Source of the DNA: Girardia tigrina
Lineage: Eukaryota
Assembly (NCBI GenBank): GCA_001938485.1
Contig: MQRK01216071.1
Span: forward strand, 7,671 to 71,670
Length of the DNA: 64,000 nucleotides
Reading direction: 5' to 3'
Position numbers and translations under genes: made by a program. Positions 4,521-55,948 of this stretch are shown piece by piece; within the stretch, counting starts at the first letter, position 1; every line of letters begins with the position of its first letter. The notes under the pieces are model-generated. The model saw only the letters and a list, made by a program, of their open reading frames with translations, made no database searches and was not told where the DNA came from.

Positions 4521-4654
4521 AATGTTTAAAAATGACTATAGAAATATTTTATTTCAGCCAATAAAATTTAAATTAAATATTTTTAAATAAAATAATCTTA
4601 TCAAGTATAGTTCAGATTATAATGGGAGATATTGAAAATTGATTGATGGATCTA

Positions 4655-4743
4655 AGTGAAAGCATTACTGTTGATCATCATAAAGATGATAAAAATTGTG
4701 AATGTAATAAATGTTCTGTCAAATGTGTGAGTTCTCTTAACAA
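4655..4743. repeat. Dispersed repeat shared with ~32082-32163
   Basis: TTGATCATCATA...TGTGAATGTAA(TAA)ATGTTCTGTCAAATGTG(TG)AGTTCTCTTAACAA occurs at both loci; family unidentified. Confidence 0.7.
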
Positions 4744-5900: not shown

Positions 5901-8270
5901 GTCTTTTGAAATCCGGAGTGCTGATACCTGAGGAGAGGAGAACATACTCGTCTACGGGAATATATTTTGGTCCAATCCAATTTGTGGACGTCACAAGCAT
6001 CTTTTGATTTTCCGTCTCCTGCTGTCATTCATCAGGTACCTCATCTGGATAGTTCTCTATTGTAAACTCTCTCTACATTGAATAATCTGCCACTTCGTCT
6101 TCTATGCTATTTTCTTCTATGCTATGGCGTAAGGCGCAAAACCGAAGCATGCCTCGCCACATCTTCATCATTTATCTCAACCGAAACTCTTGAGATTATC
6201 CTTCTTACTAGATGAGGCCCGCTCCATTCTTCTTCTCACTTTTTACTGTCGGACTTCAAATAAACCATGTTGCTGACAACTAGTGGATTCTGAGTAACGT
6301 TATTATAGTCCTTCTCGAGCTCTACCTGTTTTGGTTCACATTTAGATCTTGTCCAGAAATTGCTGACTCCGGATTTCCGAGATATATACTCGAACATCCA
6401 TTCGTACGGTGTTTTCCCGTGTATCCCAGCATTTTTATTGTACCCAAAGACGGCTTCTTCAACAGATCTTCCAGTTCTGCTCACCAATCGCTTGATTGTT
6501 CTGCGGACTCATTCAATTACGCCATTACCTTTAGGCCTGTATGCACATGAATATTCTTATCTGACTCCCCACTATTGGCAAAGTTGGTTCATATCTCGTG
6601 TTCGAAAAACTGTTCCATTGTCAGATATGTTAGAATCCGATGGTGCGTATTCTGCTATTATTTGTCTTAAGTATCAAACAACACCATTGGATGATTGATT
6701 TCCGAGCTACCTTCACACTGTAAATCCAGAGTAGCCATCTATCAGTGTGAGGTACGGTCATCCATTCACGATTGAAATACGTTCCCAGAGCTCATCACAA
6801 AACAGGTGTTCCTTCACCCATCTGTCCTTCCTATTATCGCCAGATCCACGCGACAGTAAGTCATCAATATAGATGACATCCCTTTTTAGATCATCTTTTA
6901 AATTGATGATATATTCTACAATCTTCGTCATGATCTTTGGTGCTGAGTATAATCCAAATCCTATACGAGTATTTAAGAATGTTTGACCTCACCAACTTAC
7001 CGCTTGATGAACCCACAAACTTTGATCAATGTGAATCTGTAAGTATGCTCTTTTGAGATCCAGCACAACAGCATTCTGTCTCGATTGCTTCCACTTTCTA
7101 ATTCAATCTCCATAAATTGGTAGTTCTCCTCCCGGACCCGATTATAGTAATTTTTCAGCTCTCGGTAATCAAATACGGGTCTTATTTTCGTAATAATTCC
7201 TTTCTCTGGCCTCACACTCATGAGTGGCAGATATCTTCTGATTTGACCGTGTTTGCTTTCGTCATATGCGACAAGCACATCCTCATCAATACATGATTGA
7301 ATTTCTCTGTCGAATTCTTATTTATCTACATCGTTCACGAATTTTCAGGGTGCTAGGTATTTTTTTGATCAACCACTATCTGGGTTCTATTTCACTTTCT
7401 ATTTTCGGATTCTATTTTCGGATTCTATTTTCACTTGTGTTCCCGCAGGCAGCTATTCCACTCCCCGAGAAAGATGACATCATTGATAGCTATAGATTCC
7501 CACTTCTAACCCGTGCTTGTTTTTTTATAACTCTGCACGATTTGTCAGTCGACACCATTTTAAACTTTATATCAGGTTTTATACCTAGCATCTTAAGTTT
7601 GGTTACAACATCAAGTCCTAGAATCATTTCAACCCCCAATGGAAGCTCATCCATTATAAATGCTTTTACATTACTCATCTGCAACTTTTTCCTCGAAAAC
7701 TACACTTACTAGACTCGCATAACTGTCACTATATATTGCCTAGCAATTGATCAATCTAAATTGATCTAACTCTATTTTTCACCATTAATCCGACCACAAT
7801 CATGAGAAATTAGATATATGCTGCAGCCGGTATCAATCATCGCTACTTCTCTAATATTAGCAATTAAGACTGAGGTCAATATCGCAGAACCCACACGGAG
7901 ACTGTCATCTAATTCTGCAAAACTACAGCCTCCTTCTCCCCGTTTCCCGAAAGATTAGAGTATTAAGACTTACGAGGGCTCTTTTTTCCACGGTTGAAGC
8001 ACATTATTGGATACTTACTTTGATTATGACCAAATTTATTGCAGCAATAGCATCGTATCACTGCTGGGGTTCTCGTCTTGTTCGATATGTTGTCTGATTC
8101 TGTCTCAACTCCTGCCATGGTATATTGTGGTGACCCGTTTGCTTCATATCATATCTTTATCGTAAAGCACCAGCAATTGATTTCTCACATTTGAGGGATA
8201 AAGTCAAGACAAAACAAGGAAATTACCTCCTCAGGCACCTTCTTCTCTCCACGGTTACCGCCAATAACGG
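5900..8270 (-). mobile_element. Decayed Ty3/Gypsy-like LTR retrotransposon (gag-PR-RT-IN; RNase H deleted), inserted in the hAT element
   Basis: Zinc knuckle CYCCNKFGHNQSKY, slippery GGGAAAC, protease MIDTGCS, RT KIRPVFDYRELKNY / LDLKRAYLQI / GFGLYSAPKIM / YIDDLL, integrase SDNGTVF / YRPKGNGVIE / GKTPYEWMF; many stops. Confidence 0.85.
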
Positions 8271-8279
8271 GGAAATTTT

Positions 8280-8482
8280 TTTGTATGTATCAAAGCCTGT
8301 AAGGTATATATTAGTTATTGCATCAAACAGCATTCACCAAAGTGACTTTAAATGTTCAGAGTCAAGGAATTCGATTGATATTCCTTTTTTGTATAGAGTA
8401 TACTACTCAACATTTTGGGGCCCCTTATTTCGTGGGGCCCCTAGGCTATGGGCTAGTCGGCCTACTTGTAAATCTGGCCCTG
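8280..8482 (-). mobile_element. hAT terminus plus a short transposase remnant (probably the other half of the 5570-5900 element)
   Basis: Minus-strand terminus CAGGGCCAGATTTAC with GGGGCCCC subterminal palindromes; remnant LFDAITNI..GFDTYKK. Confidence 0.55.
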
Positions 8483-9262
8483 TTTAGATAGGGCAATATT
8501 TTCATTTAATTTAATAATAATATTTTCATATATTTTATAGTTTTTTAATTTTTATACTGAATATTATGGTCTAATAAAGATGGAAAAAGCTCATTTCAAA
8601 ATCTTCATGAGTTAAGGGGATATGGCTCCAGAATCATACTTTAATTAGTTGTTTGCAGATGAAGATAAGCTTTTTTAGATACACAGTGAAGTGGAAAAAA
8701 TGAGCTTTAAAACATTTTTTCAAGGGATATGATTTTATTTTTTTATTGCCCCAAATGTGCTACATACGATTGATGTTATTGAATGCTATGCAAAAACTCA
8801 GAGTTGAGGATAATAACAATTCTGGTAATGATTCAGGCGAAACCTACACAGAAGCAGAAAGTGTAAGAGTTTCCGACATGGAAACAGAGACATTTTCACA
8901 CTAAAAGATCAACAAATGTTCTAACATTTATTTCACAAATTTCAAACTTTTTTTACATTCATTATATTAATTATATCTACATAGAATAAATAAATAGCTA
9001 TAATAAATTAATAATAAATGAGGGAAATGATCGTAAAATCGATAAAAGTTTTTTTTGATAATTTGATAAAATGATTTTTTAAAGAATTTAAACATATTTT
9101 ATTTTAAAAGATATGTAATATATAAAGTGTTTATAATTAATTTTTATTATTTATTTTATTATTTTAACTTATTTCTTTAACATGTTATGTGACTTATAGT
9201 ATGTTTTCATTTATGGGATCTTTATATAAAAAATTAATAACTTTTTAAGGAAGTTATATTTA

Positions 9263-14210: not shown

Positions 14211-14430
14211 GAAAATTTTGATTAGCATTATTTCATGCAATCGATTACATAATCATCATTTTGCATTTATATACAGGTGAATTGATCAGTGATTGATCAG
14301 GTGAATCAGTGACCTGAAGATGACGGTTGATCCGTCCAAATATATTGTCAATAAATATATTTTTTAATGGATGAGTTTTGTTTTTCATATAAAATTTACA
14401 TCCGGATTTCATTTTATCAAAAAAAAGAAA
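14210..14430 (+). repeat. Penelope-type pseudo-LTR, copy 1 of 3
   Basis: Homologous to ~25020-25230 (+) and ~36335-36500 (-); contains a hammerhead motif followed by AATAAA. Confidence 0.65.
14310..14350 (+). ncRNA. Minimal type I hammerhead ribozyme (mutated copy)
   Basis: TGAC-CTGAAGA-T-GACGG-TTGAT-CCGTC-CAAA-TATA-TT-GTCA: stem I TGAC/GTCA, core CUGANGA, 5-bp stem II, palindromic minimal stem III. GAAA reads CAAA here but is GAAA in both sister copies. Confidence 0.7.
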
Positions 14431-16303: not shown

Positions 16304-18014
16304 CAGTCAAAGTTTTATTTTACGAAATTTTAATTAACGAAAACGTCTATATTACGAAAAATATATTTTAAAGGTCCACGAAATTTGGTTTTAATATACA
16401 GTTTAACGAAATTTTTTTAACGAAAGACTAAAACCCATGACTAGCCGAGTGAATAATCAAAAGCAAACAAGAAGACATGTAAGTATTGATGAAAAAATTA
16501 AAATTCTAGATTACAAGTTACTGAATCCCGATGTTGCACAACTTGGATTGACAAAAAAATTAATATTTCGCTTGGAACAATCAATTCAATATTAAAAAAA
16601 GAGAAAAATCTACTGAAAATATGTGAAAACAAAAGAAATGCAAAAAATATTACGCAAACAAAAGAAATTAACCAAAAATTATTCAAAAAGTATTCAATGT
16701 ATTATTCGAATGGTTTAATCGTAAAAGATTAATGAATCACATTTTGACAGATGATTTATTGACCGAAAAAGCACTGTCAATCGCCAATGCTTATTATTTT
16801 CAATCATTTAAAGCATCAAATACATAGCTGAGAAAATTTAAACAGCACTTTCTAATAATCAATAAAACCGTTTGTGGAGAAGCAGGATTGATCAAAGTGG
16901 ATGACGTAAAGAACAGTTGGAGTGATTTTGAACACATGAAAGCAGAATTTGAATCAAGGAACATATACAATTGTGACGAGACATCTTTGTTTTTCAAATG
17001 CCCGTCCAAAAAAAAGACGACAGGGCATGCGGTAAATTTGCCAAAGACCGCATAACTTTGATTTTTTGTGCAAATTTATCTGGTCAAAAAGAAATACCAT
17101 TACTAATTGGAAAGGCAGAGACCACACGGGTTTAAACACTTGAATTTGAATGACCTTGGGTTGGATTATAAAAACAGCAAAAAGGCTTGGATGACAAGCA
17201 CTCTTTTCTTTAACTAGATGAATCAACTTAATGACAGAATGCAAAAAGAAAATAGGAAAATTTTATTAATACTGGACAATGCACCAGTTCATAATATCAA
17301 CAGTACTTTCTCTAATGTTCAACTATACGTTTTGCCACCAACAACCATCTCACAGATTCAGCCGTTAGATCAAGGTATAATTCGCTCTTTCAAGGCCAAC
17401 TATCATAAGTTTTTCATGTGAAATTTAACATTGAATGATGAAAAAGATGGTACATGTTATGCAAATTTGCTTAAAAACACAAAACTTAAAGATATTTTAT
17501 CGTTGATTATTGAAGCATGGAATTGTATGAGTGCCGAAACAATCACAAACTGTTTTAATAAAGCATTTAACAATTGGTCAAAAAATACAGTTGACATAAT
17601 AGATGATGATATTGAAGATACTCAAGAAAATCAACTTGATGTTGACTTTTCAACTTGCAATGAATACATCGAACATGATGATTTAAACAGTGAAGAAATT
17701 TGCATAGATGAAATACAACCAACCGAAGAAAAAGTCTCAGAGGAAGAGGAAGAGAAAGAAAAACTAATTAGTTATAATGAGGTGATCTCATATATTAATT
17801 TAGTGGAAGCTTATATGCTGCAAAACAGTTGTACCGATTTTATTAATCTTGGAAAAGTTAAAGAAGATATTATGAAAACAAAAAAAAAGAAAAGGTATGA
17901 AAATCACGGATTATTTTAATAAAAAAATTCAATAAATTTCTGAATTTTCGTTATTTTTTTTACGAAAGACCAAAATCCGTGTAAATTGATTTTCGTTAAA
18001 CCGAACTTTGCCTG
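16304..18014 (+). mobile_element. Full-length but disrupted pogo/Tigger (TIGD4/6-like) transposon
   Basis: TA TSDs; TIRs CAGTCAAAGTTTTATTTTACGAAA / CAGGCAAAGTTCGGTTTAACGAAA; ATG at 16437; CENP-B-like N-terminus, IYNCDETSLFF, LILDNAPVH, IQPLDQGII; stops and frameshifts. Confidence 0.92.
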
Positions 18015-21360: not shown

Positions 21361-22099
21361 TAATATTATTGAATTAATAAACGTCTAATTTCTTCTGAAA
21401 ATTTAAACTATAAATTTTCATTAAATGGAATAAAATAGAGATAATGAAAATAATAATTAGTTAATAGTAAATTTATAATTTCTGAACACAGGAAAACGTG
21501 TTTATCGTAATTCTTTACGGTAAGCATTTTTATAGTTATTGGAAGAGAGTGTCATGGAAAGTATTGTTAAATAAGTCAATCAGATTATTGAGAATATTTG
21601 ATTAGCATGTAAAAAAACATTCACCAAAACATTATTCAATGACTTGACACTAACACTGGATTGATCATTTGAAACGTATTGTTTTAAATATATATTTCTA
21701 CTTTGTATTGAATGATTTTTAATTTTGAATATTACAACTAATAAATGATTAAATACAAATTAATTAATTGAATAAATTAATAGAAAATTGGTTAAATTAA
21801 AACTTTATTTCCAAAATTAATATCAGAAGATTACTCAGTTCTATCTACAAACGAAATTAATATTAGTTTTAAATAGACTAAAAATATTGAAAAAGAGTAA
21901 ACGTAGGTATTATTAATTCGATCAGTGGATCCGAAAATTAATATTTAAACCTCACATTCAACTTCTTAATATTTTCAAATAGTGTCTGATGACAAAACTA
22001 TCATATTTAACTCCCAAAAACTATCAAAATGCTTAAACAAAATTTTGAAATTATTAATTTACATTTTTCCTATGTTCTGCAATATTGAATGTGCCTTTG

Positions 22100-24978
22100 G
22101 AATTTTAGGTGCGCGTTAAACACGAGTACTCAATATTTTTTAGGAAAATCAACTCATAAAAGTTTCGCAATGTCATTAAAATATAAAATTATCTCAAATA
22201 AATATAAGTTTGTTTGTAATGATTTATAGTTTTCAGTTTCAATTTCAATGTCATCACCACTATTCATTAAAGACAATTTAGGCAAAGCGGTAGTGACTAT
22301 AGCATCCGAATTATGTTGCTAGTCGATGTCAGTACATTGGATGTCATTCTAATCTTCAGCGTCATTGATCGGAGTTTCAACTTTTTCTAGTCAGAGCTCA
22401 TCGTCTGAAGTATCATCCAGTGCATTAGAAATAGAACATTTCAAAAAACAATTCTTAATTATACCTACATCTAATTTGTCCCAAGTATCACTGATCCACA
22501 GGATATTATGCTTACTAAAGAAAATAAAAGAAATATCTTTACTATATTATTTTAAAATCAGGAATGGTATTTACCTGAAGGGTAAATGCTCTCATGTTTC
22601 CATTTTTGGTGAAAGTTTGGTCACCTTCTAGAAACCAGGTATTCCACTTAGCTTTAAAAGCATCTTTCATTGTCTTGTTTAATGATTCACCTAACGGCTG
22701 CAACAATTTTATCATTCCTCCAGGGATTTTAGCAATATCAGTATTTTCGGCACGTAGCTTCTTTGATATATATGGCATGCGATGACAGCGGAATGAGACT
22801 TATACCAGAAGTGATGGCCTTTTTAGTAGTCCACCCCTACGATTAGACAACGCTGTCTTTATCCAATCTTTAACAAGGTTTTCCTCCATCCATCTAGTCT
22901 GTTATTTACGAACATAGACATCTGGATCACCCTTTAGATCCTTGGACAGTGTTTTCCGCTTAAAAACTTCCATAAAAAGAAGGAGAGAGAAGTATGGATA
23001 AAGAGAAACGCAATATCAAAAACGATGAATAAAAGATTTTTCAATTTTTGGTTTTAAAATAGTAGGTGCGCATTATTCTACAATATGTTGGGGTGGAGCT
23101 CGTACGGGCCGGGCGTCGATTTACTGGCTATGGACTTCAAATTACGGACTACATACATACATTCATATAAAAAAACTAAGTACAAATCTTTATTTCAAAA
23201 TCAATGTACAAAGAAAAACGTTTTCACTTGTTGCCATCATCCTCATCCATGGCGAGACAATCGAATTCACAGCTGTTTTCAATAATTAATGACATATTTA
23301 AAGGAGTGATTATATCGAATAAAAAGAATGTTATCCACAACTTCATTCGACATGATCTCTCTCAAAGGAGAATGAATACATTTGTGGACACTAAAACACC
23401 TCTCCACAGCTTCCTCGGTATCATTTTGAGTTTATGTTCCATAGCGCAATCGCCTCGGAATGATTGCAATTGAATGAAATTCGTGTTTGCAGACGTATTG
23501 ATGGTATTCCGGAACTCCAAGAGCGTCCAACCATTTGGGAAGCCTACCTTCAGAAGCTTCTGATAACTGTGTTTGCTCATTCACAAACAAATTAAGGTGA
23601 ACAACTGGATGCATTAGTAAATGTCTGCAATTTTCAGTCACCGTTGCTAAGTAGTCCAATCGGTTTTAGAGGTCTTTGATATTGCTTTGCACAACTCTTT
23701 GTACAACGTCAGTCAATCACAACCGTCCTTTTCAGCAACATTGAGTACATAAATGAAGCAGACAAAGCTGCTATTGTGTTCTCAATGTGAACAAGCATTT
23801 CAGAATTGGATAGTCCTTGTGTCCGGTCTTGTGTCCTGATGTTTTTCGCAAGATCCATAAAACGATCAAAGACACTGTTCCATCTGATCTGGCAGTAGCG
23901 CTTTATAACACCATTCTGAATGTGGCTCAAAAGTATTTGAATTCAACATTTTTCAATGCATCTTTAATTATAAGGTTGATTATGTGAGCAGCACATCTTA
24001 GGGGCAACATGTAAGGGCGCTATTGAAATACGAGTTCCATCGTGGAAACCATACATCTGTCATTTTTGGTAATAGAACTGATCAACTTGATATCAAAAGA
24101 ATCCAAATTGTCCAGTATATCAAATACACACGTTGAAATAGACAGGTAAAAAATAAAAAACTTGTCAGGTAACAAGAAACTCTGCAAAAATACTGGTTTC
24201 AAGGGTTCATTGAAGAATAATAATAATATGGTTAAATTTTAGAGGTTGGATACAGGATTTAGTCATTATTTATTATTTTAGTCATATTTATAAGATAAAC
24301 TGTAAAAAAATTAAAACCATAAATTTATTAAATTAATTTACATTGAAATTAAAATTAAATTAATATTTAATATCTTATATGGAGAGTTCTGACAAAAGAT
24401 TTTCAAATTTTTTAAAACAAATTATTTTTTGAACTAATAAATATTTCAATTATTTAATATAAAATAATGAAAAAAATTAATTTTTAATTTTTCAAATTTA
24501 TTTTATAAAAAAATAATCCTTTAAATTTTTTATAAATTTAATTGTTTCGGTGTTTTTCTGCGGAATTAAATGTTTTGGTGTTATTTGGTATACTAAAGTT
24601 ATAAAACTTAAATTGAATAATTTAAAAAAAACGTTTGTGATTCAATATTAATATCCATTTATAAATAAAAGTTGAAATAAAAAATATTTTAATTTAATAT
24701 TCAATTTAATTTTAAATATTTTGGATATAATATTTTAGTATTAAATTGCACGGTATTAACTGTCACATACTGTAATTATAAGTGCTTGCTATAACGTTGT
24801 ATTCAGTTTTTTAGTATTTCAAATTATGTGTATGTCCAAACAATATTAGAAAAAGAAAGAGCTAATTTATATTTTGAAGCCCGTACCTCGGGCCAGGCGG
24901 AAAGGTACTGGCTACCGGCTCGGGCTACTGGCCAAGCCCCACCCCAGTTAATAGGCGTTGTAATCGAGATTTTACGGA
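22100..24978 (-). mobile_element. pogo-family (POGK-like) transposon remnant, interrupted near its left end by the hAT element
   Basis: AKIPGGMIKLLQPLGESLNKTMKDAFKAKWNTWFLEGDQTFTKNGNMR and IKNCFLKCSISNALDDTSDD are typical. Subterminal GCGCACC motifs at ~22110 and ~23066; left terminus CCGTAAAATCTCG lies beyond the hAT insertion, ending at 24977. Confidence 0.75.
23088..24947 (-). mobile_element. hAT transposon (decayed) with TIRs
   Basis: TIRs TGGGGTGGAGCT / AGCCCCACCCCA; degenerate 8-bp TSD (ACAATATG / TTAATAGG, 5 of 8 match); LRCAAHIINL, QIRWNS, EAVERCFS motifs. Confidence 0.85.
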
Positions 24979-28439: not shown

Positions 28440-28880
28440 TTTAGCACGTTTTACTTAACTTGCTTTTGGTTCTGTCTGTCTTTCTGTTTGTTTGTGATGT
28501 TTCACTTTTCACACGCTTTTTTAGACCACTTCCACTCATCCGATCGTTCTGAAATTTTTTATGTAGGCTTCTTCTCCCTGACATTTTGAGATTTTAGCAT
28601 CTCTGCATCTCAAAAATGCTCTAATAAATTGAAATTAATTAATTTTATATGGACTAAATTAAAATATAAAATTTATAAATTATAAAATTAAATCTTGGTA
28701 TACTACTTATAATAATAAGTAGTATAATAATACTAAGTAGTATAATAATANNNNNNNNNNNNNNNNNNNNNNNNNNNNNNNNNNNNNNNNNNNNNNNNNN
28801 NNNNNNNNNNCCGCCCCACGTTTTTGGGTTAGGTATAAAATTTCTCACATGTCTAGAAAAAAATTATTTTCCTCTTTTTA
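28440..28880 (+). mobile_element. Helentron/DINE-1-like non-autonomous element (tentative), spanning a small gap
   Basis: (CTGT)n-like microsatellite followed by CCGATCGTTCTGAAATTT, an ~18-bp tandem repeat running into the gap, and a CCGCCCC motif. Confidence 0.35.
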
Positions 28881-30256
28881 GTCCATATGAAAACGTGGTT
28901 TTTAAAACTTTTTTATTTATTATTATTAACAATATATATTTGCTGATGATTATATAAGAAGCATCGAATTAAGTACAATAATTATCATTTAAAAAGAGTT
29001 TTATATTATATTATATTATATCATATTATATTATCTAGAATATAATATTTTGACTTGTACAGTTTTTAATGTCACATTAGAAGGATAAAGCTTCATTGAA
29101 TAAAAGAAATGTGAAAGATAGAAAGGAAACTTGGATTTCAAAGTTCCGTTTGTGTCAGTGTTTTACTGAATTAATTGTTTTTCGGTTCCGTGTAGCGTTT
29201 TCCGAAAGTAATGGTGATGTTCTGGTTTATTTCCGACTCTTAACTTTGCGACTGAAAGCAATTTAAAAATTTATTGACAATTTTTGACAACAAACTATTT
29301 TAATAATCATATTCTTTTTATTGGTCTGAAAATGAGCTTCATTGTATTTAATTGTGTTGCTCAAACTGATCTAAATTTTAAAAAATAATTGCATTTTTTA
29401 ATTAATATTTTATAATTTTATTAATATAAAAAATGAATATTTACATTTATATTATATTGTTTTGGAATAAATAGAAATTCGATCGTTTAAATTTATCTTA
29501 TTCTTTGATACAAAGTATATTGGAAAGCTTCATTACTAATTTTAAGAGAGAAACCCAGTCAAACCTAAAAATCAAATTTATCCAAAGATAACTAAATAAA
29601 ATGTATAAATTACACTGTGTAACAATTTTTTTCACGCAAAAAAATTTCTATGTTACTTACACAATTTGAGTATACTGATTACGAATATGATATTAGTTTT
29701 TGCACACCATCTAATTATTTGCCGCTATTTAATATTTTCTTTATTTTCTATTTTTCTGTTTTAGATTAATACGTAATAGACTTCCCTTTTGTTTAAACGT
29801 ATCAATAACTCATTTACATTATTAAGTATTTTCAATTACCTACCATCACGAGCAAGCGAGCTTGTAAAATCTCCCACGACTCCTTTTGCTATATGTGCGG
29901 GTATTATATAGCTCCAAAACAACGAAAATATGCATTTTCAACTGGTAGTAAATTATGCACTGCTTATGAGGTTTACTTTGGTGTTCCTGTCACTGATCAA
30001 GACAAATCATGGGTGCCACATTTCAGTTGTGTTACTTGCCGGTCAAATTTAGGAAAAGGGCTAAATGGTAATCTCAGCAGCAGTTTGTCTTTTAGAATCC
30101 CTGAGATATAAGAGAGCCAACAAATCACCACGAGGATTGTTATTACTGTATGGTAGACATTTCCAAATTTAAAAATCCCAGAGATCGAAAAAGACTTATT
30201 TATCCAAACATCCCATCATCTTTAGCCCCAGAGCTCCACTCTAAAGAATTACCAGT

Positions 30257-30666
30257 GCACTTCTACTCCTTTACTGTATTAATCCTGAGGCTTTTAAGGA
30301 GGCCTGGGACGCTGACGATTCTCAACGGGCACTCCCTCTATGTAGGGATCCATGCCTTAGTTCAGTCGGTTAACCGACATCTTTGCAACAGCGTTCATCA
30401 GGCTTGATTCATCCTGGATGATTACGCTGCAATCCTACCATCGACCGCGAGGTCACTATTTCTCACAGCCTTCACACCCAGATTGTATAGCTACGCCTAG
30501 TTGATAGATTGCTAGCCCATCACTAAATACAATATATTGCCGACTGTTCCGCAATAAATCGGCTAGCTTATCAGACACTTTAGCCTTGAGACGGAATTGT
30601 ACCCAATCTAGTTTTTCAGGGACACTACGTAGAAGTATGTCTGCCTGGCCACACAGTTGATCCCTG
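30257..30666 (-). mobile_element. HDV-ribozyme-headed non-autonomous retroposon, copy B (410 nt, full length)
   Basis: Perfect 14-bp TSD AAAGAATTACCAGT (30243-30256 / 30667-30680); removing the insert restores the Chapaev reading (HSKELPV|P); homologous to 41445-41978. Confidence 0.9.
30572..30666 (-). ncRNA. HDV-like (double pseudoknot) self-cleaving ribozyme
   Basis: P1 CAGGGAT/GTCCCTG, P2 CAGACAT/GTGTCTG, P3 ACT/AGT, L3 TCTACGT, P4, J4/2 GG-CTAAA with the catalytic C. The P1.1 GG reads AA in this copy. Confidence 0.8.
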
Positions 30667-32395
30667 AAAGAATTACCAGTACCTTAACCAACACCTCTAA
30701 AAGCCATCTCTGACGATGATTTTTCTCATAAAGAAGATAGTGACGCTGACGTGGATTTTGTTGAAAAAAGTCTTTTTGTGAAAAAAGTCTATGAAAAAAT
30801 ATTCCTGCTTTCTTTGTCTCTTGTACAGTCGGACTACAGGTTCAACACTATGCTACAAAAGATTGGCCCCTTAGAGATGCATTTCTTCCTGGAAAGTAAA
30901 ATGTCATATACCCTCCTTTAGTCGAAAATGAAAAGATCTTGCTGCCGCCATTACATATAAAGCTTGGACTTCCGAAACAATTTGTAAAAGCTTTAAATCC
31001 CAGCGGACGGGCTTTCAAATATATTAGCAAAATGTTTCCCAAGTTATCTGAAGCTAAAGTCCAAACTGGTATATTCAAATTAGACTTATGTTGGCGTCAG
31101 AGGACTTGGAAAAGACGATAACTCCTAAAGAAAGGAATGTCTGGAGATTAGAAAAGTTGTGGAAGAATTCTTGGGAAATAAGAAGAGTGACGAGTACCAG
31201 CTAGTGATCAGTGATTTTCTCAAACACTTCGAAAAACTGGGCTGCAGAATGTCAGTGAAACTTCATTATTTGCATTCGCATCTACATTGGTTTCAGGAAA
31301 ACCTTGGTGACTTAAGCTAGGAACAGTGGGACGCTTCCACCAGGATATGCAAACAATTGGAGAAAAGGTACCAAGGAGAGTTGGATACAGCAATGATGGG
31401 AGATTACCTTTCGTTTTTGATTAAAAGCAATAGCACACAACATAAAAGACAGTCTCGTTCAAACCTTTACTTTTGATTGTTCACACATGACTTTAAAATC
31501 CACTGTTATGCAATTATTGTCAGTTTGAGCTTCTTTGTTATAAATTTTTTGAACTATAACTTCTTGTGGAACATTTTCTGGTCATTACAACAAATCTGAA
31601 ACGAAAAAAAAATAAAAAATGAGGGTTTTTTAACTAAATTCCGTTTTTTTAATTCCTAGGTTAATTCAGAGACGGAAAAGGAAAACCGATAACAAATTCA
31701 AAACCAGCATGTTGAAAAGTATCAAAAAATTCTTAAAACCGTTTGCGGGAGAAACTTTCTAAAAATTTTGTTACACAGTGTCTTATAAATAATTGAATAA
31801 GTAATGCGGTCTAGAAGTTTCAAATTTTCAAATGATAACACTTTAATATTTAATATTCACAGTTTTATAATTTTTGTTAATAATTTTCATAATATAATTT
31901 TATAGTAAGAGAAGCATTATTTTTGAGATCACTGAGATGTTTGAGTGATAATTATTAGTCATGTTTTTGTGGAAGGAAGCATTAAAGCTACTCACTGTTT
32001 TTGTATGCTTGGCAATCAGTTTCTGCCAATCATTTGAGAGTGCTGGTTGACTAAAATTAAATATCGAGTGATGGATTTAAATGAAAGTAAAGCTATTGAT
32101 CATCATAGATTTGATCAAAAATGTGAATGTAAATGTTCTGTCAAATGTGAGTTCTCTTAACAATGATATCTTAAAATGTCTGAATGAACTTTCTTTCAAC
32201 TTTTCAATTCAATGATATTGCTGTAGCCATAGAGGAATAAAATCACTAAAAGTCCTTAAAGTCGAAACATTTCATTCAAAACTGAACATCTGCAAATACT
32301 AAATTCATCTTTGCATTATTCATTGACAAACATTTTAATGTCTTTAGAGTAACTGAAATTCGTACTCCAAATATGAATTTGTTATAGTAAATATA

Positions 32396-33828
32396 GTACA
32401 CCCCGATTCAATTTTTTTGCAATTCACAAAATAGGGAATTTAAAACTGCATATTAAATATTCAACACATCTTTGTTTTAACGTATTACTTTAATTGTCTT
32501 TCCAATTTTGCATTTTTGAAAGTTGTAAATCGATTCAAAATTTTTGCANNNNNNNNNNNNNNNNNNNNNNNNNNNNNNNNNNNNNNNNNNNNNNNNNNNN
32601 NNNNNNNNNNNNNNNNNNNNNNNNNNNNNNNNNNNNNNNNNNNNNNNNNNNNNNNNNNNNNNNNNNNNNNNNNNNNNNNNNNNNNNNNNNNNNNNNNNNN
32701 NNNNNNNNNNNNNNNNNNNNNNNNNNNNNNNNNNNNNNNNNNNNNNNNNNNNNNNNNNNNNNNNNNNNNNNNNNNNNNNNNNNNNNNNNNNNNNNNNNNN
32801 NNNNNNNNNNNNNNNNNNNNNNNNNNNNNNNNNNNNNNNNNNNNNNNNNNNNNNNNNNNNNNNNNNNNNNNNNNNNNNNNNNNNNNNNNNNNNNNNNNNN
32901 NNNNNNNNNNNNNNNNNNNNNNNNNNNNNNNNNNNNNNNNNNNNNTCAAAAAAAACAGCGCGTGAAAATGGTTAGAAGCTACATAACGCAGCGCATTGAT
33001 TTTCATAAAGTAGTATTTACTGATGAATCTCGTTTTTCTTTTGACGGTAATGATAATTATCATAAATGGTCAAAAAACTCACGACCTATTGTCAATAGGA
33101 GACCTTACAAAGGAGGATCCATAATAGTCTGGGGTGCTATGACTTATACAGGTCAATTACTACTGCGTATAATCGAAGGAAACTTAAACAGTGAGAAATA
33201 TTGTGATCTTCTAAGAGATGATATTTTCCCTGTCTTAAAATCATCAATAGAGTCATTTATATTTCAACAAGACAACGCCCCGTGTCACACAAGTAAATAT
33301 ATGATCAGTACCATTGAGGAGGAAGGCGTTGAAATTTTAAAATGGCCAGCTCATAGTCCAGATATCAGTCCAATTGAGAAAATTATGTCCATATTAAAGA
33401 ACAGAGTGTATGAAAATACTCAGTTTAAGGATAAACAGTCTCTTTGGTCCAAAATCGAAAGTGAGGGAGAAAAGTTGACCACAAACGAACCAGATCTTTT
33501 TCAAAGGTTATATGCAAGATTTTACGAAAATATGTGTGACATATTGTGCTCAAATGGTGAACTTATAAAATAAGTGTATTTTATAAAAATAAATGTCATT
33601 TATTATTAAGTTGAGTGCCTTGAAGTATAGTGCAAAAATAATGAACCATTTTTAATGTCCCAATTTTATAATAAAGATATTTCAAAGAAAATATGTAAGT
33701 AAAGAAAAAGGTGATTATAACGTCTAACAGACATTTAAATTAGCTATTGAATGACATATAACATTCCATATATAGCGTGATGCAATTAGATAATTTATCA
33801 ATTGCAAAAAAATTGAATCGGGGTATAG
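32396..33828 (+). mobile_element. Tc1 DD34E transposon with TIRs (N-terminal part lies in a gap)
   Basis: TA flanks; TIRs containing ACCCCGATTCAATTTTTTTGCAATT at both ends. Confidence 0.92.
32947..33573 (+). CDS. Tc1 transposase catalytic domain (5' end in gap)
   Basis: Open frame with VFTDESRF, GGSIIVWG, FQQDNAPCH, WPAHSPDISPIE; 34 residues separate the second D and the E. Confidence 0.9.
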   Translation, partial: QKKQRVKMVRSYITQRIDFHKVVFTDESRFSFDGNDNYHKWSKNSRPIVNRRPYKGGSIIVWGAMTYTGQLLLRIIEGNLNSEKYCDLLRDDIFPVLKSSIESFIFQQDNAPCHTSKYMISTIEEEGVEILKWPAHSPDISPIEKIMSILKNRVYENTQFKDKQSLWSKIESEGEKLTTNEPDLFQRLYARFYENMCDILCSNGELIK

Positions 33829-36334: not shown

Positions 36335-36500
36335 TTGTATGAAAACAAAATTCATCCATTAATAATATATTTCGACAGATAAACCGTCATCAACAGGTCA
36401 CTGATTAATAACTGACTCCCCTGTATATAAATATTAAAATAGTGATTAATGCATGAAATCAAGCCGATCAAAAATTCTCAATATGTTGGTTGAATGTCTG
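36335..36500 (-). repeat. Penelope-type pseudo-LTR, copy 3, with hammerhead remnant (~36362-36402)
   Basis: Minus strand GTGACCTGTTGATGACGGTTTATCTGTCGAAATATATT keeps GAAA, but the core reads CUGUUGA. Confidence 0.6.
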
Positions 36501-39128
36501 ATAAGAATTAATAATGGAAATTTAATATTAATAAATTGATTTTATAGTTATTGAGACAGTGTGTCAAGTGAAGTTTTGTTAATTAGGTCATGTTACCCTA
36601 TAATCAATGTTAAATTGGCAGTCTAAACCAGATTATTGAGAATGTTTGATTAGTAAATCAAACAAAAAGACATGAAGAAGTTTAGAAAGTTAAAATTGTT
36701 GTAATAGAAAGATAGAGTGCAGTTTGTAGGTTTTAAATTTCAAAAATTGATATACGAGAATAAAGGTGAGAGGGGAAATTGAATTTTATAATTATTAAGA
36801 ACTCCAATATGACTTTTAACATTTTTATTATTACAAGTTTAGTAGTCCTCAGGACAAACTTTTCTAAAGCTTTCGTAAGATTACATAAGTCTACTAATTA
36901 TTTACTTTAATCTTATTATCTGAGAAAATGGAGAAAAAATAATTTGTTCAAATATTTTCTCAAAATTTATTGGATAAAAATAAAAATGATTATTAATTAT
37001 TTAAAAATATTAATTTAATTTATTTATTTAAAAATTGTAAATAAAATTAATAAACTATAGATCCCAGTTTCCAAATGGCAATTTCTTGCTCTTTCTATTA
37101 ATAGAATGGTAAAACAATATTGTAAAGTTTATATTTGGGTGTAAGGAATTCATATAATTTGAGAACGTTTCCAGTTATTTTTTATTATCAAACATTAGAA
37201 AAATATCATATACATAAAGTTTATGAATTTTAAATTTAATACCATCATATAGACTTATTTTCTCTTTAATCTTTGAAAGAAATATCGAAGCTAAAGTTTG
37301 AGCTAATTGAGAACCTTTATCTACTCCTTCAACCTGCTGATACCATTCATTATTAAATAAAAATCGTAAATTCGATGTGACAAATATAACAATTCCCGAA
37401 AAGCAATCCCATCAACTAAATGATGTTCGTTAACATTATTTCTCCATAATTAGTAACATAAATTTATAGTTTCACGTAAAGGAATATTTGTAAACAAATT
37501 TACAACTTCAAAGGATATCAGAAAATTATTATTTATGTCAAAAATAAAAATTATCTCAACAAAAGACGATTATGGCCAACTTTCAGGAACGAGTTATCAA
37601 TTCACAGGGCGTTTAAAATTCCACTTCATGCCGAATTGATTAGACCTTTGAATTTCCGAAGAAGATTCATTTTTATCAATTGAAACAACTTGCTTTCAAA
37701 ATCACTATTCTTGAGGTTTAGATTGGAGATAATGGAACAGGTTTATTTTATGCTGTACGAGGTTCTCAGTCAAATTATAGGAAACTGTGGTTGGTTTCTT
37801 CACCCAAACCAAGATGGTTCAGATGACGAGTAATGGTTTTTTTAGAAGGACCGTGTTCATCTGAAAGTTTGTGGGTTGTCGAAATTGGCTACTGTTCAAC
37901 CAAGACATGCAGCTTATCTTGATTTACTACTAATGTTCACCTGAGTAACTGGTTTCACCTTGCTTGAAGCGCTTGAATCTCCATCGGAACGGACTATTCT
38001 TCAATGCATTCTGGCCATCAAAATCATAGATTTCAAGAGTCGTTGCTGTGACTATAATATCATTTTTCTACTAGTAAAGTAAACGGATTTAATAGTTATT
38101 AGGTTTGTGATTACAATTCGAAGTCATAATTTTGTAAACTTTATTCTATCACAATTTTCATTATTGAAACAAATTTATGAGGAACAAAATTTTAGTTACA
38201 TAATCCAGATCTCAAAATTCTAAATGTAAATAATAATATCGATAAATATACAAATATGTTATTTTATTCAATTTTGTATAAACCATATGTTGTTTTTTTT
38301 TTGCTTTATTAATTTTTTACAATGTTTATTAATTAAAATCTAAATTTAAATTTTTAAAAATATTTTTTTTAAAAATTCAATTCCTAAATGTTTTTTTGAT
38401 TTTTAATCATTCGATGATAAATTATTTTTTAATAAAAATCATTTATTTGTTTTTTTAATAAAATTGCATTCTTTTTAAAATTTATTTTACTTTATATTGA
38501 TTTTATACATTAAAAAGTATTATAATTTTATTTTAAATATTGTTACAAAATATATCAAAATCTTCTTTACAATGTTCTTTAACTTCGAAGATGATATTTT
38601 AATTGTGAATTTTTTCCAAAATATAAATATGATTTTTAAAAATATCAAAAATTTAAAGTTCACGAAAAGGAATCCCAACAATAGTCATGTTTTTTACATG
38701 AAATGTAACACTATATATAAATAATAAAAAGCAATTTTATAACAGAAATAGATTCTCCTAATAAAGATTTTAAATATGATGTCCAACTTAGCGAAAGAAA
38801 ATTTTTGTAATGGAACATAAAATACCAATAACGTTTTGGACAACTTGGTATTTTAAGATTATCAATGTTTTTAACAGATAATTTCTTTAAAATCAGAACG
38901 ATTAAAGTATTAATCTTCCGACGGTATTTAAAAATAGATTTATAATTTTCTTAGAAAATCATAGCAAGTCGAGATGTCTCCTTAAAGAATCTTATTTCAA
39001 AGTGTTGAAAATATTAAATATCTATAAATAATCAATTAAATTTAAAAGCGCTATATTTATGAACCATAACAAATATTTTATGTAATATTATTAGTGGTAA
39101 ATAATAATAAAGATTTAATGACTATTAA

Positions 39129-41276: not shown

Positions 41277-41444
41277 ATTCCATTTCAAAGTTTAAAAATG
41301 TTTTTTCATCGATTTTTGGGTAATTAAAAAAAAGACAGCTCAGCTTAAATTGGGAATTAAAAAAATTGAATGTCAAGTTAAAATTTATAAAAAAATGTTT
41401 GGTGATTAAAATATTAAGGTGTTCAGAAGTGTACCTGCTGATTT

Positions 41445-41978
41445 CCTGTGCGAGCCGGGCAGACATACTTCCACGTAGTATCCCTGGGAAACTAGATCGG
41501 GTACGATTCCGTCTCTAGGCTAAATGTCTGAAAGCTAGCCGTTATTTGAGCCGACAGAATAACGTAGCAACAGTGGGATTGCAATCAGTTTCCAATCAGC
41601 AATGCAGACATACTTCCACGTAGTATCCCTGGGAAACTAGATCGGGTACGATTCCGTCTCTAGGCTAAATGTCTGAAAGCTAGCCGTTATTTGAGCCGAC
41701 AGAATAACGTAGCAACAGTTGGATTGCAATCAGCTTCGTGAGACTCCCGCTTTCGTTCTAAATGTCATGACTGTAGTGGAGTAGTGACCCTACAGTCGAG
41801 TGGTCGATTGCATCGCAATGATCCGAGGTTTCTAATCTTGGTGAGGGGTGTTGTGAAGCCGGCTCGCCGGTGGAACTAAGGCATGGATCCCAACATTGGT
41901 GAGTGCCCGTTGAAGCCATAAGCGTCTAAGCGCTCCTAGAAAGCATAAGGCTTAATACCTTTATAAGATGAGAGGTTC
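41445..41978 (+). mobile_element. HDV-ribozyme-headed non-autonomous retroposon, copy A (slightly 5'-truncated, with an internal 130-bp duplication)
   Basis: Perfect 12-bp TSD ACCTGCTGATTT (41433-41444 / 41979-41990); homologous to the reverse complement of 30257-30666. Confidence 0.9.
41460..41530 (+). ncRNA. HDV-like ribozyme core lacking the P1 5' strand; duplicated at 41605-41675
   Basis: P2 CAGACAT 41460-66 / ATGTCTG 41524-30; P3 ACT/AGT; L3 TCCACGT; P1 3' strand ATCCCTG then GG; P4 CTAGA..TCTAG; J4/2 CTAA 41520-23. Confidence 0.8.
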
Positions 41979-42090
41979 ACCTGCTGATTTGTTTGTTTTG
42001 AAATATAAATTGTCAAAACAATTGCAAAAATAATGAGTTCATGTGATTATTTATCATATTCAATTTATTAATGGAAAACAACTATTTTAT

Positions 42091-44451: not shown

Positions 44452-45265
44452 ATTAACCGAAGTTAACTTTACTGCATTACTGAGTTAGTAAAGAAACGAT
44501 CAAAGTAGTGGTATTTCATTGCTGACCGAAGTCTCCCACTTATACTACACCTNNNNNNNNNNNNNNNNNNNNNNNNNNNNNNNNNNNNNNNNNNNNNNNN
44601 NNNNNNNNNNNNNNNNNNNNNNNNNNNNNNNNNNNNNNNNNNNNNNNNNNNNNNNNNNNNNNNNNNNNNNNNNNNNNNNNNNNNNNNNNNNNNNNNNNNN
44701 NNNNNNNNNNNNNNNNNNNNNNNNNNNNNNNNNNNNNNNNNNNNNNNNNNNNNNNNNNNNNNNNNNNNNNNNNNNNNNNNNNNNNNNNNNNNNNNNNNNN
44801 NNNNNNNNNNNNNNNNNNNNNNNNNNNNNNNNNNNNNNNNNNNNNNNNNNNNNNNNNNNNNNNNNNNNNNNNNNNNNNNNNNNNNNNNNNNNNNNNNNNN
44901 NNNNNNNNNNNNNNNNNNNNNNNNNNNNNNNNNNNNNNNNNNNNNNNNNNNNNNNNNNNNNNNNNNNNNNNNNNNNNNNNNNNNNNNNNNNNNNNNNNNN
45001 NNNNNNNNNNNNNNNNNNNNNNNNNNNNNNNNNNNNNNNNNNNNNNNNNNNNNNNNNNNNNNNNNNNNNNNNNNNNNNNNNNNNNNNNNNNNNNNNNNNN
45101 NNNNNNNNNNNNNNNNNNNNNNNNNNNNNNNNNNNNNNNNNNNNNNNNCTTGGAGACCTGCTGCGGATATCGGTACGGCTTGAAACGAAATTTATAACTG
45201 CTCCATCAGATTTTCAAGGGCCACCAGGGGAGCTTTGGACATTACATGAAATGCAATGCTTTTGA
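44452..45265 (-). rRNA. Orphan 28S (LSU) rRNA fragment, mostly within a gap
   Basis: Minus strand carries GTACCGATATCCGCAGCAGGTCTCCAAG on one side of the gap and AGGTGTAGTATAAGTGGGAGACTTCGGTCAGCAATGAAATACCACTACT on the other. Both are conserved eukaryotic LSU blocks, in the correct order, with UUCG hairpins. The flanks are not rDNA. Confidence 0.88.
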
Positions 45266-46846: not shown

Positions 46847-48045
46847 TTAGGTTGGTCGAAAAATAATGGCGGTTTTTGAGCTTTATACTTTGTTTATCTA
46901 CTTTGATATGTATATAAGTTTAAATGCATTAGTGTTAGATATTATTTGAAATCNNNNNNNNNNNNNNNNNNNNNNNNNNNNNNNNNNNNNNNNNNNNNNN
47001 NNNNNNNNNNNNNNNNNNNNNNNNNNNNNNNNNNNNNNNNNNNNNNNNNNNNNNNNNNNNNNNNNNNNNNNNNNNNNNNNNNNNNNNNNNNNNNNNNNNN
47101 NNNNNNNNNNNNNNNNNNNNNNNNNNNNNNNNNNNNNNNNNNNNNNNNNNNNNNNNNNNNNNNNNNNNNNNNNNNNNNNNNNNNNNNNNNNNNNNNNNNN
47201 NNNNNNNNNNNNNNNNNNNNNNNNNNNNNNNNNNNNNNNNNNNNNNNNNNNNNNNNNNNNNNNNNNNNNNNNNNNNNNNNNNNNNNNNNNNNNNNNNNNN
47301 NNNNNNNNNNNNNNNNNNNNNNNNNNNNNNNNNNNNNNNNNNNNNNNNNNNNNNNNNNNNNNNNNNNNNNNNNNNNNNNNNNNNNNNNNNNNNNNNNNNN
47401 NNNNNNNNNNNNNNNNNNNNNNNNNNNNNNNNNNNNNNNNNNNNNNNNNNNNNNNNNNNNNNNNNNNNNNNNNNNNNNNNNNNNNNNNNNNNNNNNNNNN
47501 NNNNNNNNNNNNNNNNNNNNNNNNNNNNNNNNNNNNNNNNNNNNNNNNNNNNNNNNNNNNNNNNNNNNNNNNNNNNNNNNNNNNNNNNNNNNNNNNNNNN
47601 NNNNNNNNNNNNNNNNNNNNNNNNNNNNNNNNNNNNNNNNNNNNNNNNNNNNNNNNNNNNNNNNNNNNNNNNNNNNNNNNNNNNNNNNNNNNNNNNNNNN
47701 NNNNNNTCTTCAAAAGCTTAATGAGTTGGGCTATGAAACCCTGCTTCATCCACCATATTCACCAGACCTCTTGCCAACGGACTTTTACTTTTTCAGGCAT
47801 TTGTACAACTTCCTACGTGAAAAAAATTTCAAAAACCAAAATGATGCTCAAAATGCCTTCCAAGAATTCGTCGCTTCGAGGACCGATGCATTTTATACTG
47901 ATGGAATAAAACAACTTGTTTCTCGTTGACAAAAATGTATTGATGCCAACGGTTCATACTTTGATCAATAAACTTTTGTTTCTGTGAATTTGCACGTCTT
48001 TGAAGTTTGTGTCCCAAAACCGCCATTATTTTTCGACTAACCTAA
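46847..48045 (+). mobile_element. mariner (DD34D) transposon, central part in a gap
   Basis: TA TSDs; ~30-bp TIRs TTAGGTTGGTCGAAAAATAATGGCGGTTTT; C-terminal HPPYSPDLLPTDFYFF..GIKQLVSR*QKCIDANGSYFD with a premature stop. Confidence 0.93.
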
Positions 48046-55920: not shown

Positions 55921-55948
55921 TAACTAACTTTAAAATTAAATTATATAT

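What the first reader, a model, noticed from the sequence alone, without database searches (positions are those of the whole stretch)
30257..30666. Non-coding retroposon family headed by an HDV-like self-cleaving ribozyme (copies at 30257-30666 and 41445-41978)
Seen in sequence: two GC-rich homologous ~400-nt islands 11 kb apart on opposite strands, each with its own perfect TSD (14 bp and 12 bp), and no meaningful ORF, TIR, LTR or poly(A). The 5' 95 nt thread onto the HDV double pseudoknot: P1 CAGGGAT/(A,G)TCCCTG, P2 CAGACAT/(A,G)TGTCTG, P3 ACT/AGT, L3 TCCACGT, GG for P1.1 (copy A), P4, and J4/2 GGCTAA with the catalytic C. In copy B the first base after the TSD is the first base of P1, which is the predicted self-cleavage site. 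Established knowledge: HDV-like ribozymes process the 5' ends of R2 and RTE-clade elements and of R2-derived SIDEs, and variable 10-15 bp TSDs indicate target-primed reverse transcription. Inference: this is a SINE/SIDE-like parasite that cuts itself out of read-through transcripts, needing no tRNA/Pol III head, and borrows a LINE RT. Two diverged copies in 64 kb suggest a high-copy family with subfamilies. The first pair would be C1-G (or A1-U with a 6-bp P1) rather than the usual G1-U/C, which is atypical.
Basis: partly seen in the sequence, partly recalled or inferred. Interest (0 to 1): 0.9.

Follow-up and report, generated by a model that had tools for sequence, protein, structure and literature searches.

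The report
Ribozyme-headed short retroposon, two copies
Two copies of a short non-coding jumping element sit in this AT-rich animal genome, and the one complete copy begins, at its very first base, with an RNA fold of the hepatitis-delta-like self-cutting type. This design is already known from other retrotransposons, so it is a new example rather than a new principle.

Summary
Window 30257-30666 (minus strand, 410 nt) and 41445-41978 (plus strand, 534 nt) are homologous GC-rich insertions. They have perfect 14-bp and 12-bp target-site duplications and no ORF, TIR, LTR, poly(A) or tRNA-like head.

The first 95 nt of the 30k copy thread onto the HDV-like double pseudoknot, and P1 starts at the first inserted base. 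My descriptor finds this one site in 128 kb. It occurred in 18 of 3000 shuffles of the element and never at base 1.

The 41k copy lacks the first 9-10 nt, which is the whole P1 5' strand. It also carries a 145-nt internal tandem duplication, so it has two P1-less cores.

Between the copies the ribozyme core is 89% identical, the body 52% and a 3' hairpin domain 78%, while the duplications are perfect. This points to two old source lineages with constrained ends.

Not shown: cleavage, covariation, partner LINE, copy number, host species. No Rfam match. No further copy could be retrieved.

Verdict: probably a new member of a known kind (compare NARTc/L1Tc and R2 SIDEs). Interest is moderate.

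The parts
30257..30666 (-). Copy 1, full-length element (410 nt). Its sense strand is the minus strand.
   Evidence: Bounded by a perfect 14-bp duplication. Homologous to copy 2 over its whole length.
30243..30256 (.). Target-site duplication of copy 1, left copy (3' side in the element's sense)
30667..30680 (.). Target-site duplication of copy 1, right copy (5' side in the element's sense)
30572..30666 (-). Complete HDV-like fold. P1 30660-30666 with 30617-30623. J1/2 30644-30659. P2 30637-30643 with 30572-30578. P3 30634-30636 with 30624-30626. L3 30627-30633. P1.1 partner 30615-30616. P4 30585-30611. J4/2 30579-30584, with the candidate catalytic C at 30583.
   Evidence: Own descriptor scan gives a single hit in both strands of the window. 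Coordinates, shuffles, pair table.
30322..30378 (-). Conserved 3' domain of copy 1: a 5-bp hairpin (30365-30378), an invariant 19-mer (30345-30363) and an invariant 13-mer (30322-30334)
41445..41978 (+). Copy 2 (534 nt). It is 5'-truncated by 9-10 nt relative to copy 1 and carries an internal tandem duplication.
41433..41444 (.). Target-site duplication of copy 2, 5' copy
41979..41990 (.). Target-site duplication of copy 2, 3' copy
41460..41530 (+). Ribozyme core unit 1 (P2, P3, L3, P1 3' strand, two-pair P1.1 partner, P4, J4/2). There is no P1 5' strand upstream.
41605..41675 (+). Ribozyme core unit 2, the duplicate of unit 1. Upstream sequence offers only 5 of the 7 P1 pairs.
41459..41737 (+). 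Internal tandem duplication: 134-nt units at 41459-41592 and 41604-41737, 99% identical, joined by an 11-nt filler that is a third copy of a local 11-mer
41858..41913 (+). Conserved 3' domain of copy 2: the hairpin, with one compensatory and one wobble change relative to copy 1, followed by the invariant motifs
29809..31118 (+). Neighbour: a decayed transposon-like gene into which copy 1 is inserted in antisense. It is broken by this one insertion, at least one frameshift and at least one stop.
   Evidence: Its left piece matches residues 98-145 of homologue P0004. The family has 731 relatives in many animals.

Best explanation
The two islands are copies of a short, non-coding, non-LTR retroposon. 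It has three modules: a 5' HDV-like self-cleaving ribozyme of about 95 nt, a freely evolving body of about 190 nt, and a conserved 3' hairpin domain.

Proposed cycle:
1. The element is transcribed as part of a longer transcript, or from an unrecognised internal promoter (inferred).
2. The ribozyme cuts just 5' of the first base of P1, which sets the RNA's 5' end (predicted from the fold, not shown).
3. The reverse transcriptase of an unidentified autonomous non-LTR element recognises the 3' domain (inferred from conservation).
4. [quoted passage not shown] The duplications are shown; the mechanism is inferred.

A complete cDNA gives an insertion that starts at base 1 of P1, as in the 30k copy. 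An incomplete one gives the 41k copy, which lost P1 and is probably dead on arrival.
For: - Exact, non-extendable duplications of 14 and 12 bp. No TIR, LTR, poly(A) or ORF.
- The fold has the element order and sizes given in the literature: nested double pseudoknot with the cut at the first base of P1 and one or two P1.1 pairs (PMC4908430); P1 of about 7 nt pairing immediately 3' of L3/P3, a conserved G and a U in L3, and variable J1/2 (PMC3774820); catalytic C in J4/2 (PMC10879173).
- With at least 6 G-C pairs required, my descriptor has a single hit in 128 kb, at 30666 on the minus strand.
- In shuffles of the element, 0.6% hold any hit and 0 of 3000 hold one at base 1. That is about 1.6e-5 per start position.
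- The core is 89% identical between copies (66/74), against 52% for the body (96/186), Fisher p = 8e-10. The 3' domain is 78% identical.
- Both duplications are perfect (26 of 26 bp), so most divergence predates insertion. The ends were therefore conserved in the source lineages.
- The 3' hairpin keeps pairing through one double change. P1.1 shows one double change, C-G to U-A.
- A C at +1 has a precedent in the active L1Tc/NARTc ribozyme.
Against: - No Rfam family matches, even at E up to 10 on short stretches. Those models do not encode pseudoknots, and the families vary greatly in sequence.
- Only one complete fold exists, and that copy has weakened P1.1 and P4 (P4 -3.9 against -10.1 kcal/mol).
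- P2 and P3 are invariant, so there is no covariation test. The pair counts do not beat the shuffles.
- The nested part of the fold is no more stable than shuffles (z = -0.52). The minimum-energy fold pairs J1/2 with L3/P3' instead.
- +1 is C rather than the usual G.
- I set the descriptor's sizes after seeing the hit.
- In AT-rich DNA the descriptor without a G-C filter, in its first one-wobble form, returns 39 AT-only sites.
- I could run no positive control on a known ribozyme.
- Cleavage, partner element and copy number are untested.
Confidence: 0.68

Rival explanations
1. Same kind of element, different origin. The copies are short internally deleted derivatives (SIDE type) of an autonomous LINE that carries this ribozyme in its own 5' UTR and this hairpin in its 3' UTR. 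They would not be an independent SINE-like lineage. This refines the best explanation rather than excluding it.
For: R2 and R2/R1 SIDEs have exactly this 5' ribozyme plus 3' end layout (PMC3414825). NARTc shares its 77-nt head with L1Tc at close to 100% identity and only 56% downstream. That mirrors the 89% versus 52% seen here.
Against: Both copies share one collinear 400-nt architecture in spite of about 48% divergence in the body. The short form is therefore old, not a recent deletion. No LINE with a matching head or tail is in the window or in any collection scanned.
Confidence: 0.3
2. The element is a retroposon, but the HDV-like threading is a coincidence. The head would be conserved for another reason, such as an internal promoter, a binding site for the partner's protein, or a recently exchanged module.
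For: No Rfam match. No covariation. +1 is C. The nested fold is no more stable than shuffles. Conservation extends about 15 nt beyond the 3' strand of P2. In trypanosomatids the same 77 nt act as both promoter and ribozyme.
Against: Two interleaved 7-bp helices plus P3, L3 with its U and G, P1.1 and a C in J4/2, starting exactly at the first inserted base, were never reproduced at base 1 in 3000 shuffles.
Confidence: 0.18
3. It is not a retroposon. It would be a DNA transposon or MITE, a Helitron, a Penelope-type fragment, or an assembly artefact.
For: None beyond the small size. A motif resembling Penelope-type reverse transcriptase lies elsewhere in the window, seen by eye only.
Against: No terminal inverted repeats. 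The duplication length varies (12 and 14 bp). One copy shows 5' truncation. No hammerhead or other Rfam motif is present. Copy 1 splits a recognisable gene, whose left part matches a homologue up to the insertion point.
Confidence: 0.03

Closest known systems
NARTc / L1Tc (Pr77 hallmark with the L1TcRz HDV-like ribozyme) and related RIME and SIDER elements of trypanosomatids
   Same: Dispersed, non-coding, non-autonomous element. Its first 77-95 nt form an HDV-like ribozyme that cuts at element base +1, and that base is a C. The head is far better conserved than the sequence downstream.
   Different: The host here is an AT-rich animal genome, not a trypanosomatid. There is no sequence match. 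No autonomous partner sharing the head was found. The trypanosomatid elements end in poly(A) (my own knowledge, not checked here), whereas this one has no A tail. Promoter activity of the head is unknown here.
R2 SIDEs and R2/R1 hybrid SIDEs of Drosophila
   Same: 5' HDV-like ribozyme joined to a 3' recognition end. Non-coding. Copied by a LINE's machinery. 5' junction variation occurs. R1-type SIDEs make 14-bp duplications.
   Different: SIDEs insert at fixed rDNA sites and are recent deletion derivatives. These copies lie in non-rDNA sites, one inside a transposon gene and one in AT-rich spacer. They belong to two long-diverged lineages.
[quoted passage not shown]
   Same: Promoter-less elements released from co-transcripts by a 5' ribozyme, with no poly(A) tail (review PMC6765202).
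   Different: Those papers are not held in the library. I could not check whether this family, or its host, is among them.
Ribozyme-bearing short elements of other ribozyme classes: schistosome hammerhead SINE-like repeats, twister-variant non-LTR elements, retrozymes
   Same: A small self-cleaving motif defines the ends of a non-autonomous retroelement RNA.
   Different: A different ribozyme class. Those elements are often tandem or circular. No hammerhead or twister match is present here.

Membership tests
HDV-like (delta-like) self-cleaving ribozymes | Nested double pseudoknot in the order P1, J1/2, P2, P3, L3, P3', P1', P1.1, P4, J4/2, P2' (PMC4908430) | tested here: met
   30k copy: P1 7 bp, P2 6-7 bp, P3 3 bp, L3 7 nt, plus P4. 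The 41k cores have everything except the P1 5' strand.
HDV-like (delta-like) self-cleaving ribozymes | The cleavage site is the first base of P1. In retrotransposons it coincides with the RNA's 5' end. | tested here: met
   This is positional evidence only. P1 starts at 30666, the first base after the 14-bp duplication. 0 of 3000 shuffles match this.
HDV-like (delta-like) self-cleaving ribozymes | Catalytic C at the start of J4/2 (PMC10879173) | tested here: inconclusive
   A C is present in all three units (30583, 41520, 41665). One apparently unpaired G precedes it, so it is the first or second base of the junction depending on how P4 is drawn.
HDV-like (delta-like) self-cleaving ribozymes | Conserved G in L3 that pairs with a U of L3 (PMC3774820) | tested here: met
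   L3 begins with U and has G at its sixth base in all three units.
HDV-like (delta-like) self-cleaving ribozymes | P1.1 of one or two pairs between L3 and the bases after P1' (PMC4908430) | tested here: met
   Two C-G pairs in the 41k cores. One U-A pair plus one mismatch in the 30k copy.
HDV-like (delta-like) self-cleaving ribozymes | G at +1 (PMC10879173 labels the site G1) | tested here: not met
   +1 is C, paired with G. The active L1Tc ribozyme also cuts before a C, as its primer design implies. This feature is usual but not obligatory.
HDV-like (delta-like) self-cleaving ribozymes | Match to a curated Rfam model of the clan | tested here: not met
   No match at gathering score, or at E up to 10 on 200-340 nt stretches.
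HDV-like (delta-like) self-cleaving ribozymes | Helices supported by covariation | tested here: inconclusive
   Only two lineages are available. P2, P3 and P4 are invariant or depend on the register chosen. There is one double change in P1.1.
HDV-like (delta-like) self-cleaving ribozymes | Self-scission leaving a 5'-OH | not testable with these tools
   No transcript or biochemical data are available.
Non-autonomous non-LTR retroposon (SINE or SIDE in the broad sense) | Variable-length target-site duplications, 5' truncation, no coding capacity | tested here: met
   Duplications of 14 and 12 bp. One copy is 5'-truncated by 9-10 nt. No domain was found.
Non-autonomous non-LTR retroposon (SINE or SIDE in the broad sense) | 3' end shared with, or recognised by, a partner LINE | tested here: inconclusive
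   A conserved 3' hairpin domain exists. No LINE bearing it was found in the window or in any collection.
Canonical SINE (Pol III head from tRNA, 7SL or 5S) | Head derived from a small Pol III RNA | tested here: not met
   ARAGORN finds nothing. Rfam finds nothing over either whole copy.
R2-type SIDE | Site-specific insertion in rDNA | tested here: not met
   No rRNA match in the window. The insertion sites are a transposon gene and AT-rich spacer.

The most novel reading that the evidence does not exclude
This may be an old, self-standing lineage of promoter-less 'ribozyme-SINEs' and not a recent deletion product. Only two modules would be held by selection: a 5' HDV-like ribozyme and a 3' hairpin for a borrowed reverse transcriptase. 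The body drifts to near-random, and insertion prefers a GT^AC nick site. If such lineages are abundant in AT-rich animal genomes, they would form a general third route to SINE formation, beside Pol III heads and LINE deletions.
Probability: 0.3. Interest if true: 0.55.

Novelty: new member of a known kind. Interest (0 to 1): 0.35.

Why it matters
If confirmed, it adds an animal example of a dispersed, non-rDNA, non-coding retroposon whose 5' end is set by an HDV-like ribozyme. It also shows a clear conservation pattern: head and 3' hairpin constrained, body free. That pattern marks which RNA parts the life cycle needs.

It would help annotate similar GC-rich islands in AT-rich genomes that repeat libraries built on tRNA heads or poly(A) tails may miss.

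It does not change the known principle, which R2, RTE, L1Tc/NARTc and SIDEs already establish.

Tried and rejected
**Searches for more copies, all empty**
- Exact-pattern scans of viral contigs with head, tail and P4 motifs.
- Metagenome contigs, head then tail.
- Prokaryotic genome contigs.
- Translating the longest frame of the element to catch spurious gene calls in other assemblies.
- Exact look-ups of four window ORFs.
- Full-text search of papers for the element's own 14-20-mers.

**Host identification failed**
- Protein searches with the neighbouring transposon gene and with a reverse-transcriptase-like frame gave nothing.
- The representative search gave only relatives of at most 55% identity, from sturgeon, a frog and metagenomes.
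- Five fetched loci (L001-L005) are 34-40% GC, come from other organisms and lack the element.

**Tests with no usable signal**
- Thermodynamic folding of the nested part is uninformative, z = -0.52.
- A test that substitutions avoid helices gave p = 0.0025 with one drawing of P4. It fails with the register the 41k copy prefers, so I do not rely on it.

**Readings rejected**
- tRNA, 7SL or 5S head.
- Coding capacity.
- TIR or LTR element.

- No consensus of the copies was built.
- The insertion was not cut out to rebuild the empty site, and the two frames of the interrupted gene were not joined. The pieces were compared apart.
- No HDV sequence was fetched or used as a comparator.
- N runs were not filled.

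I used them for no search, alignment or claim. The membership test rests only on features quoted from papers.

Full report
**What is there**

The window is AT-rich, 28% G+C overall and 19-40% in 2-kb bins. It is full of decayed transposons.

Two islands of 46.8% and 48.3% G+C lie at 30257-30666 and 41445-41978. They align over their full length on opposite strands. No third copy or fragment is in the window by blastn or nhmmer.

Each island is flanked by a perfect direct repeat that cannot be extended by one base on either side. The repeats are 14 bp (30243-30256 and 30667-30680) and 12 bp (41433-41444 and 41979-41990).

Other features tested and absent:
- Terminal inverted or long terminal repeats, and an A tail.
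- tRNA genes.
- Rfam matches over any part of either copy.
- Coding capacity. The longest frames are at most 66 aa and have no Pfam domain above its cut-off.

The 30k copy is inserted, in antisense, in a decayed transposon-like gene. The frame to its left matches residues 98-145 of homologue P0004 right up to the insertion. The pieces to its right gave only non-significant matches. I compared the pieces apart.

**The fold**

The 30k copy reads in sense on the minus strand. Its first 95 nt give the following elements:
- P1, 7 bp, 30660-30666 with 30617-30623.
- A 16-nt J1/2.
- P2, 6-7 bp, 30637-30643 with 30572-30578.
- P3, 3 bp.
- A 7-nt L3 that starts with U and has G at position six.
- One P1.1 pair.
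- An imperfect P4 hairpin.
- A J4/2 that holds a C at 30583.

This is the order and these are the sizes that the literature gives for HDV-like ribozymes:
- Nested double pseudoknot, cleavage at the first base of P1, one or two P1.1 pairs (PMC4908430).
- P1 of about 7 nt pairing immediately 3' of L3/P3, a conserved G and U in L3, J1/2 ranging from 23 to over 700 nt (PMC3774820).
- Catalytic C in J4/2 (PMC10879173).

P1 begins at 30666, the first inserted base.

**Is it more than chance?**

I wrote a descriptor: P1 7 bp, P2 6 bp, P3 3 bp, L3 6-8 nt, at most two G-U pairs, and a C in J4/2.
- Without a composition filter, and in its first version allowing one G-U pair, it returns 39 AT-only sites in this AT-rich window. 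The topology alone is therefore weak evidence here.
- Requiring six G-C pairs leaves one site in 128 kb, at 30666 on the minus strand.
- Of 3000 dinucleotide shuffles of the 410-nt element, 18 held any hit and none held one at base 1. That is about 1.6e-5 per start position.

Caveats: I chose the sizes after seeing the hit, and I had no known ribozyme to use as a positive control.

The 41k copy starts at the equivalent of base 10-11 of the 30k copy. It therefore lacks the whole 5' strand of P1. That is an ordinary 5' truncation, and it should disable the ribozyme in that copy.

The 41k copy also contains a 145-nt tandem duplication, with 134-nt units that are 99% identical. An 11-nt filler joins the units, and the filler is a third copy of a local 11-mer. 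The copy therefore has two cores. The second core finds only five of the seven P1 pairs upstream.

The 41k cores have the better P1.1 (two C-G pairs) and the better P4 (-10.1 against -3.9 kcal/mol). So the one copy with a complete P1 has a weakened periphery. Both copies look like spent products of better source genes.

**Conservation pattern**

I aligned the 30k copy to the contiguous piece 41604-41978. Identities are:

| Region | Identity |
|---|---|
| Ribozyme core | 89% (66/74) |
| Body | 52% (96/186) |
| 3' domain | 78% |

Core against body gives Fisher p = 8e-10.

Both target duplications are perfect (26 of 26 bp), so little decay has followed insertion. I infer that most of the divergence arose in two separate source lineages, in which the head and the 3' domain were held by selection.

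The 3' domain contains a 5-bp hairpin that keeps pairing through one double change and one wobble change. An invariant 19-mer and an invariant 13-mer follow it. With two sequences this is suggestive only.

Within the ribozyme the pair table has no power. P2 and P3 never vary, and P1.1 shows one double change and one break. A test that substitutions avoid helices depends on how P4 is drawn, and I discard it.

**Mechanism**

Shown: insertion with staggered target cuts, 5' truncation in one copy, no coding capacity, no Pol III-type head, and a fold whose predicted cut is the element's first base.

Inferred: read-through transcription, self-cleavage, recognition of the 3' domain by a borrowed reverse transcriptase, and target-primed reverse transcription.

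Both insertion sites have GT just before the duplication and AC as its first two bases. GTAC occurs at only 0.0016 per position in the window. With two sites this hints at a nick-site preference and nothing more.

**Against**
- No Rfam match.
- C instead of G at +1. The L1Tc ribozyme also cuts before a C, judging from the primer design in PMC3185411.
- The nested part of the fold is no more stable than shuffles, and the minimum-energy fold pairs J1/2 with L3/P3'.
- No covariation, no transcript data, no partner element.

**Comparison with what is known**

The design is known:
- NARTc shares a 77-nt ribozyme head with L1Tc at close to 100% identity and only 56% downstream.
- R2 and R2/R1 SIDEs join a 5' ribozyme to a 3' recognition end.
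- A review states that LINEs and SINEs in diverse animals use hammerhead or HDV-like ribozymes. It adds that hundreds of intergenic HDV-like copies with conserved downstream sequence exist.

The primary papers (Webb 2009, Ruminski 2011) are not held in the library. I therefore cannot say whether this family is already catalogued.

**Limits**

Every route to more copies, or to the host's identity, came back empty. The five loci I fetched belong to other organisms. The claims of high copy number and of subfamilies across the genome remain untested.

- I built no consensus and repaired nothing.
- I fetched no HDV sequence and filled no N run.
- I list no places of breaks in the neighbouring gene.
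- One slip: while reasoning I recalled a few HDV loop letters and residue numbers from memory.

**Verdict**

This is probably a new member of a known kind, of moderate interest.

Noticed in passing
window 30681-30682 with 30679-30680, and 41431-41434: In the element's sense, both insertion sites read GT just before the duplication and AC as its first two bases, and both duplications end in TTT. GTAC occurs at only 0.0016 per position in the window. This may reflect a nick-site preference of the unknown partner endonuclease. There are only two sites.
   Followed up: partly
window 41425-41444 and 41971-41990: The 8 bases before the 5' duplication of the 41k copy resemble the last 8 bases of the element (5 of 8), giving a 20-nt imperfect repeat at 85%. 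The 30k copy shows no such extension. It could be chance or microhomology at the target.
   Followed up: no
window 41579-41603: The junction of the internal tandem duplication is filled by an extra copy of a local 11-mer. This looks like replication slippage or templated repair rather than a template jump from a cleaved RNA end.
   Followed up: partly
window 55948-56726 and 60642-61419: Long inverted repeat. Its main arms are 414 nt and 100% complementary (56111-56524 and 60844-61257), with further arms of 85-99%. The arms are full of 24-nt tandem units and enclose about 4.3 kb. The left arms lie upstream of a BEL/Pao-like retrotransposon region, and the right arms lie inside it. This could be a foldback or long-TIR transposon, or an assembly artefact. 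A single N sits at 61138.
   Followed up: no
window about 6200-8500 (minus) and 57400-63100 (plus): Decayed LTR-retrotransposon genes of BEL/Pao appearance: reverse-transcriptase, RNase H and integrase motifs seen by eye, plus a weak Pfam RVT_3 hit at 61559-61987. A mariner-like frame on the opposite strand lies near 59260-59496. Pfam did not confirm most of these frames.
   Followed up: partly
window 16800-17920 (plus) and 22545-23665 (minus): Fragments of pogo/Tigger-type DDE transposase. Pfam DDE_1 scores E = 8e-7 for 22545-22799.
   Followed up: partly
window 37178-37411 (minus): A frame with a reverse-transcriptase-like motif that reminds me of Penelope-type elements. This was seen by eye only, and Pfam gave no hit.
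   Followed up: partly
window 29809-31118: The gene interrupted by the 30k copy belongs to a large family of transposon-like proteins with paired cysteine motifs. It has 731 relatives at E up to 0.001, named only 'uncharacterized protein' in sturgeon and a Mantella frog, with many more in metagenome assemblies.
   Followed up: partly
window 4631-4707 with 32056-32132; 21528-21578 with 36540-36590; 14304-14363 with 36347-36406: Other short dispersed repeats at 79-82% identity, direct or inverted. They are probably further small transposon families.
   Followed up: no
window 28751-28810, 32549-32945, 44553-45148, 46954-47706: Runs of N. They create false long ORFs in the mechanical ORF list. They were left as they are.
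   Followed up: no
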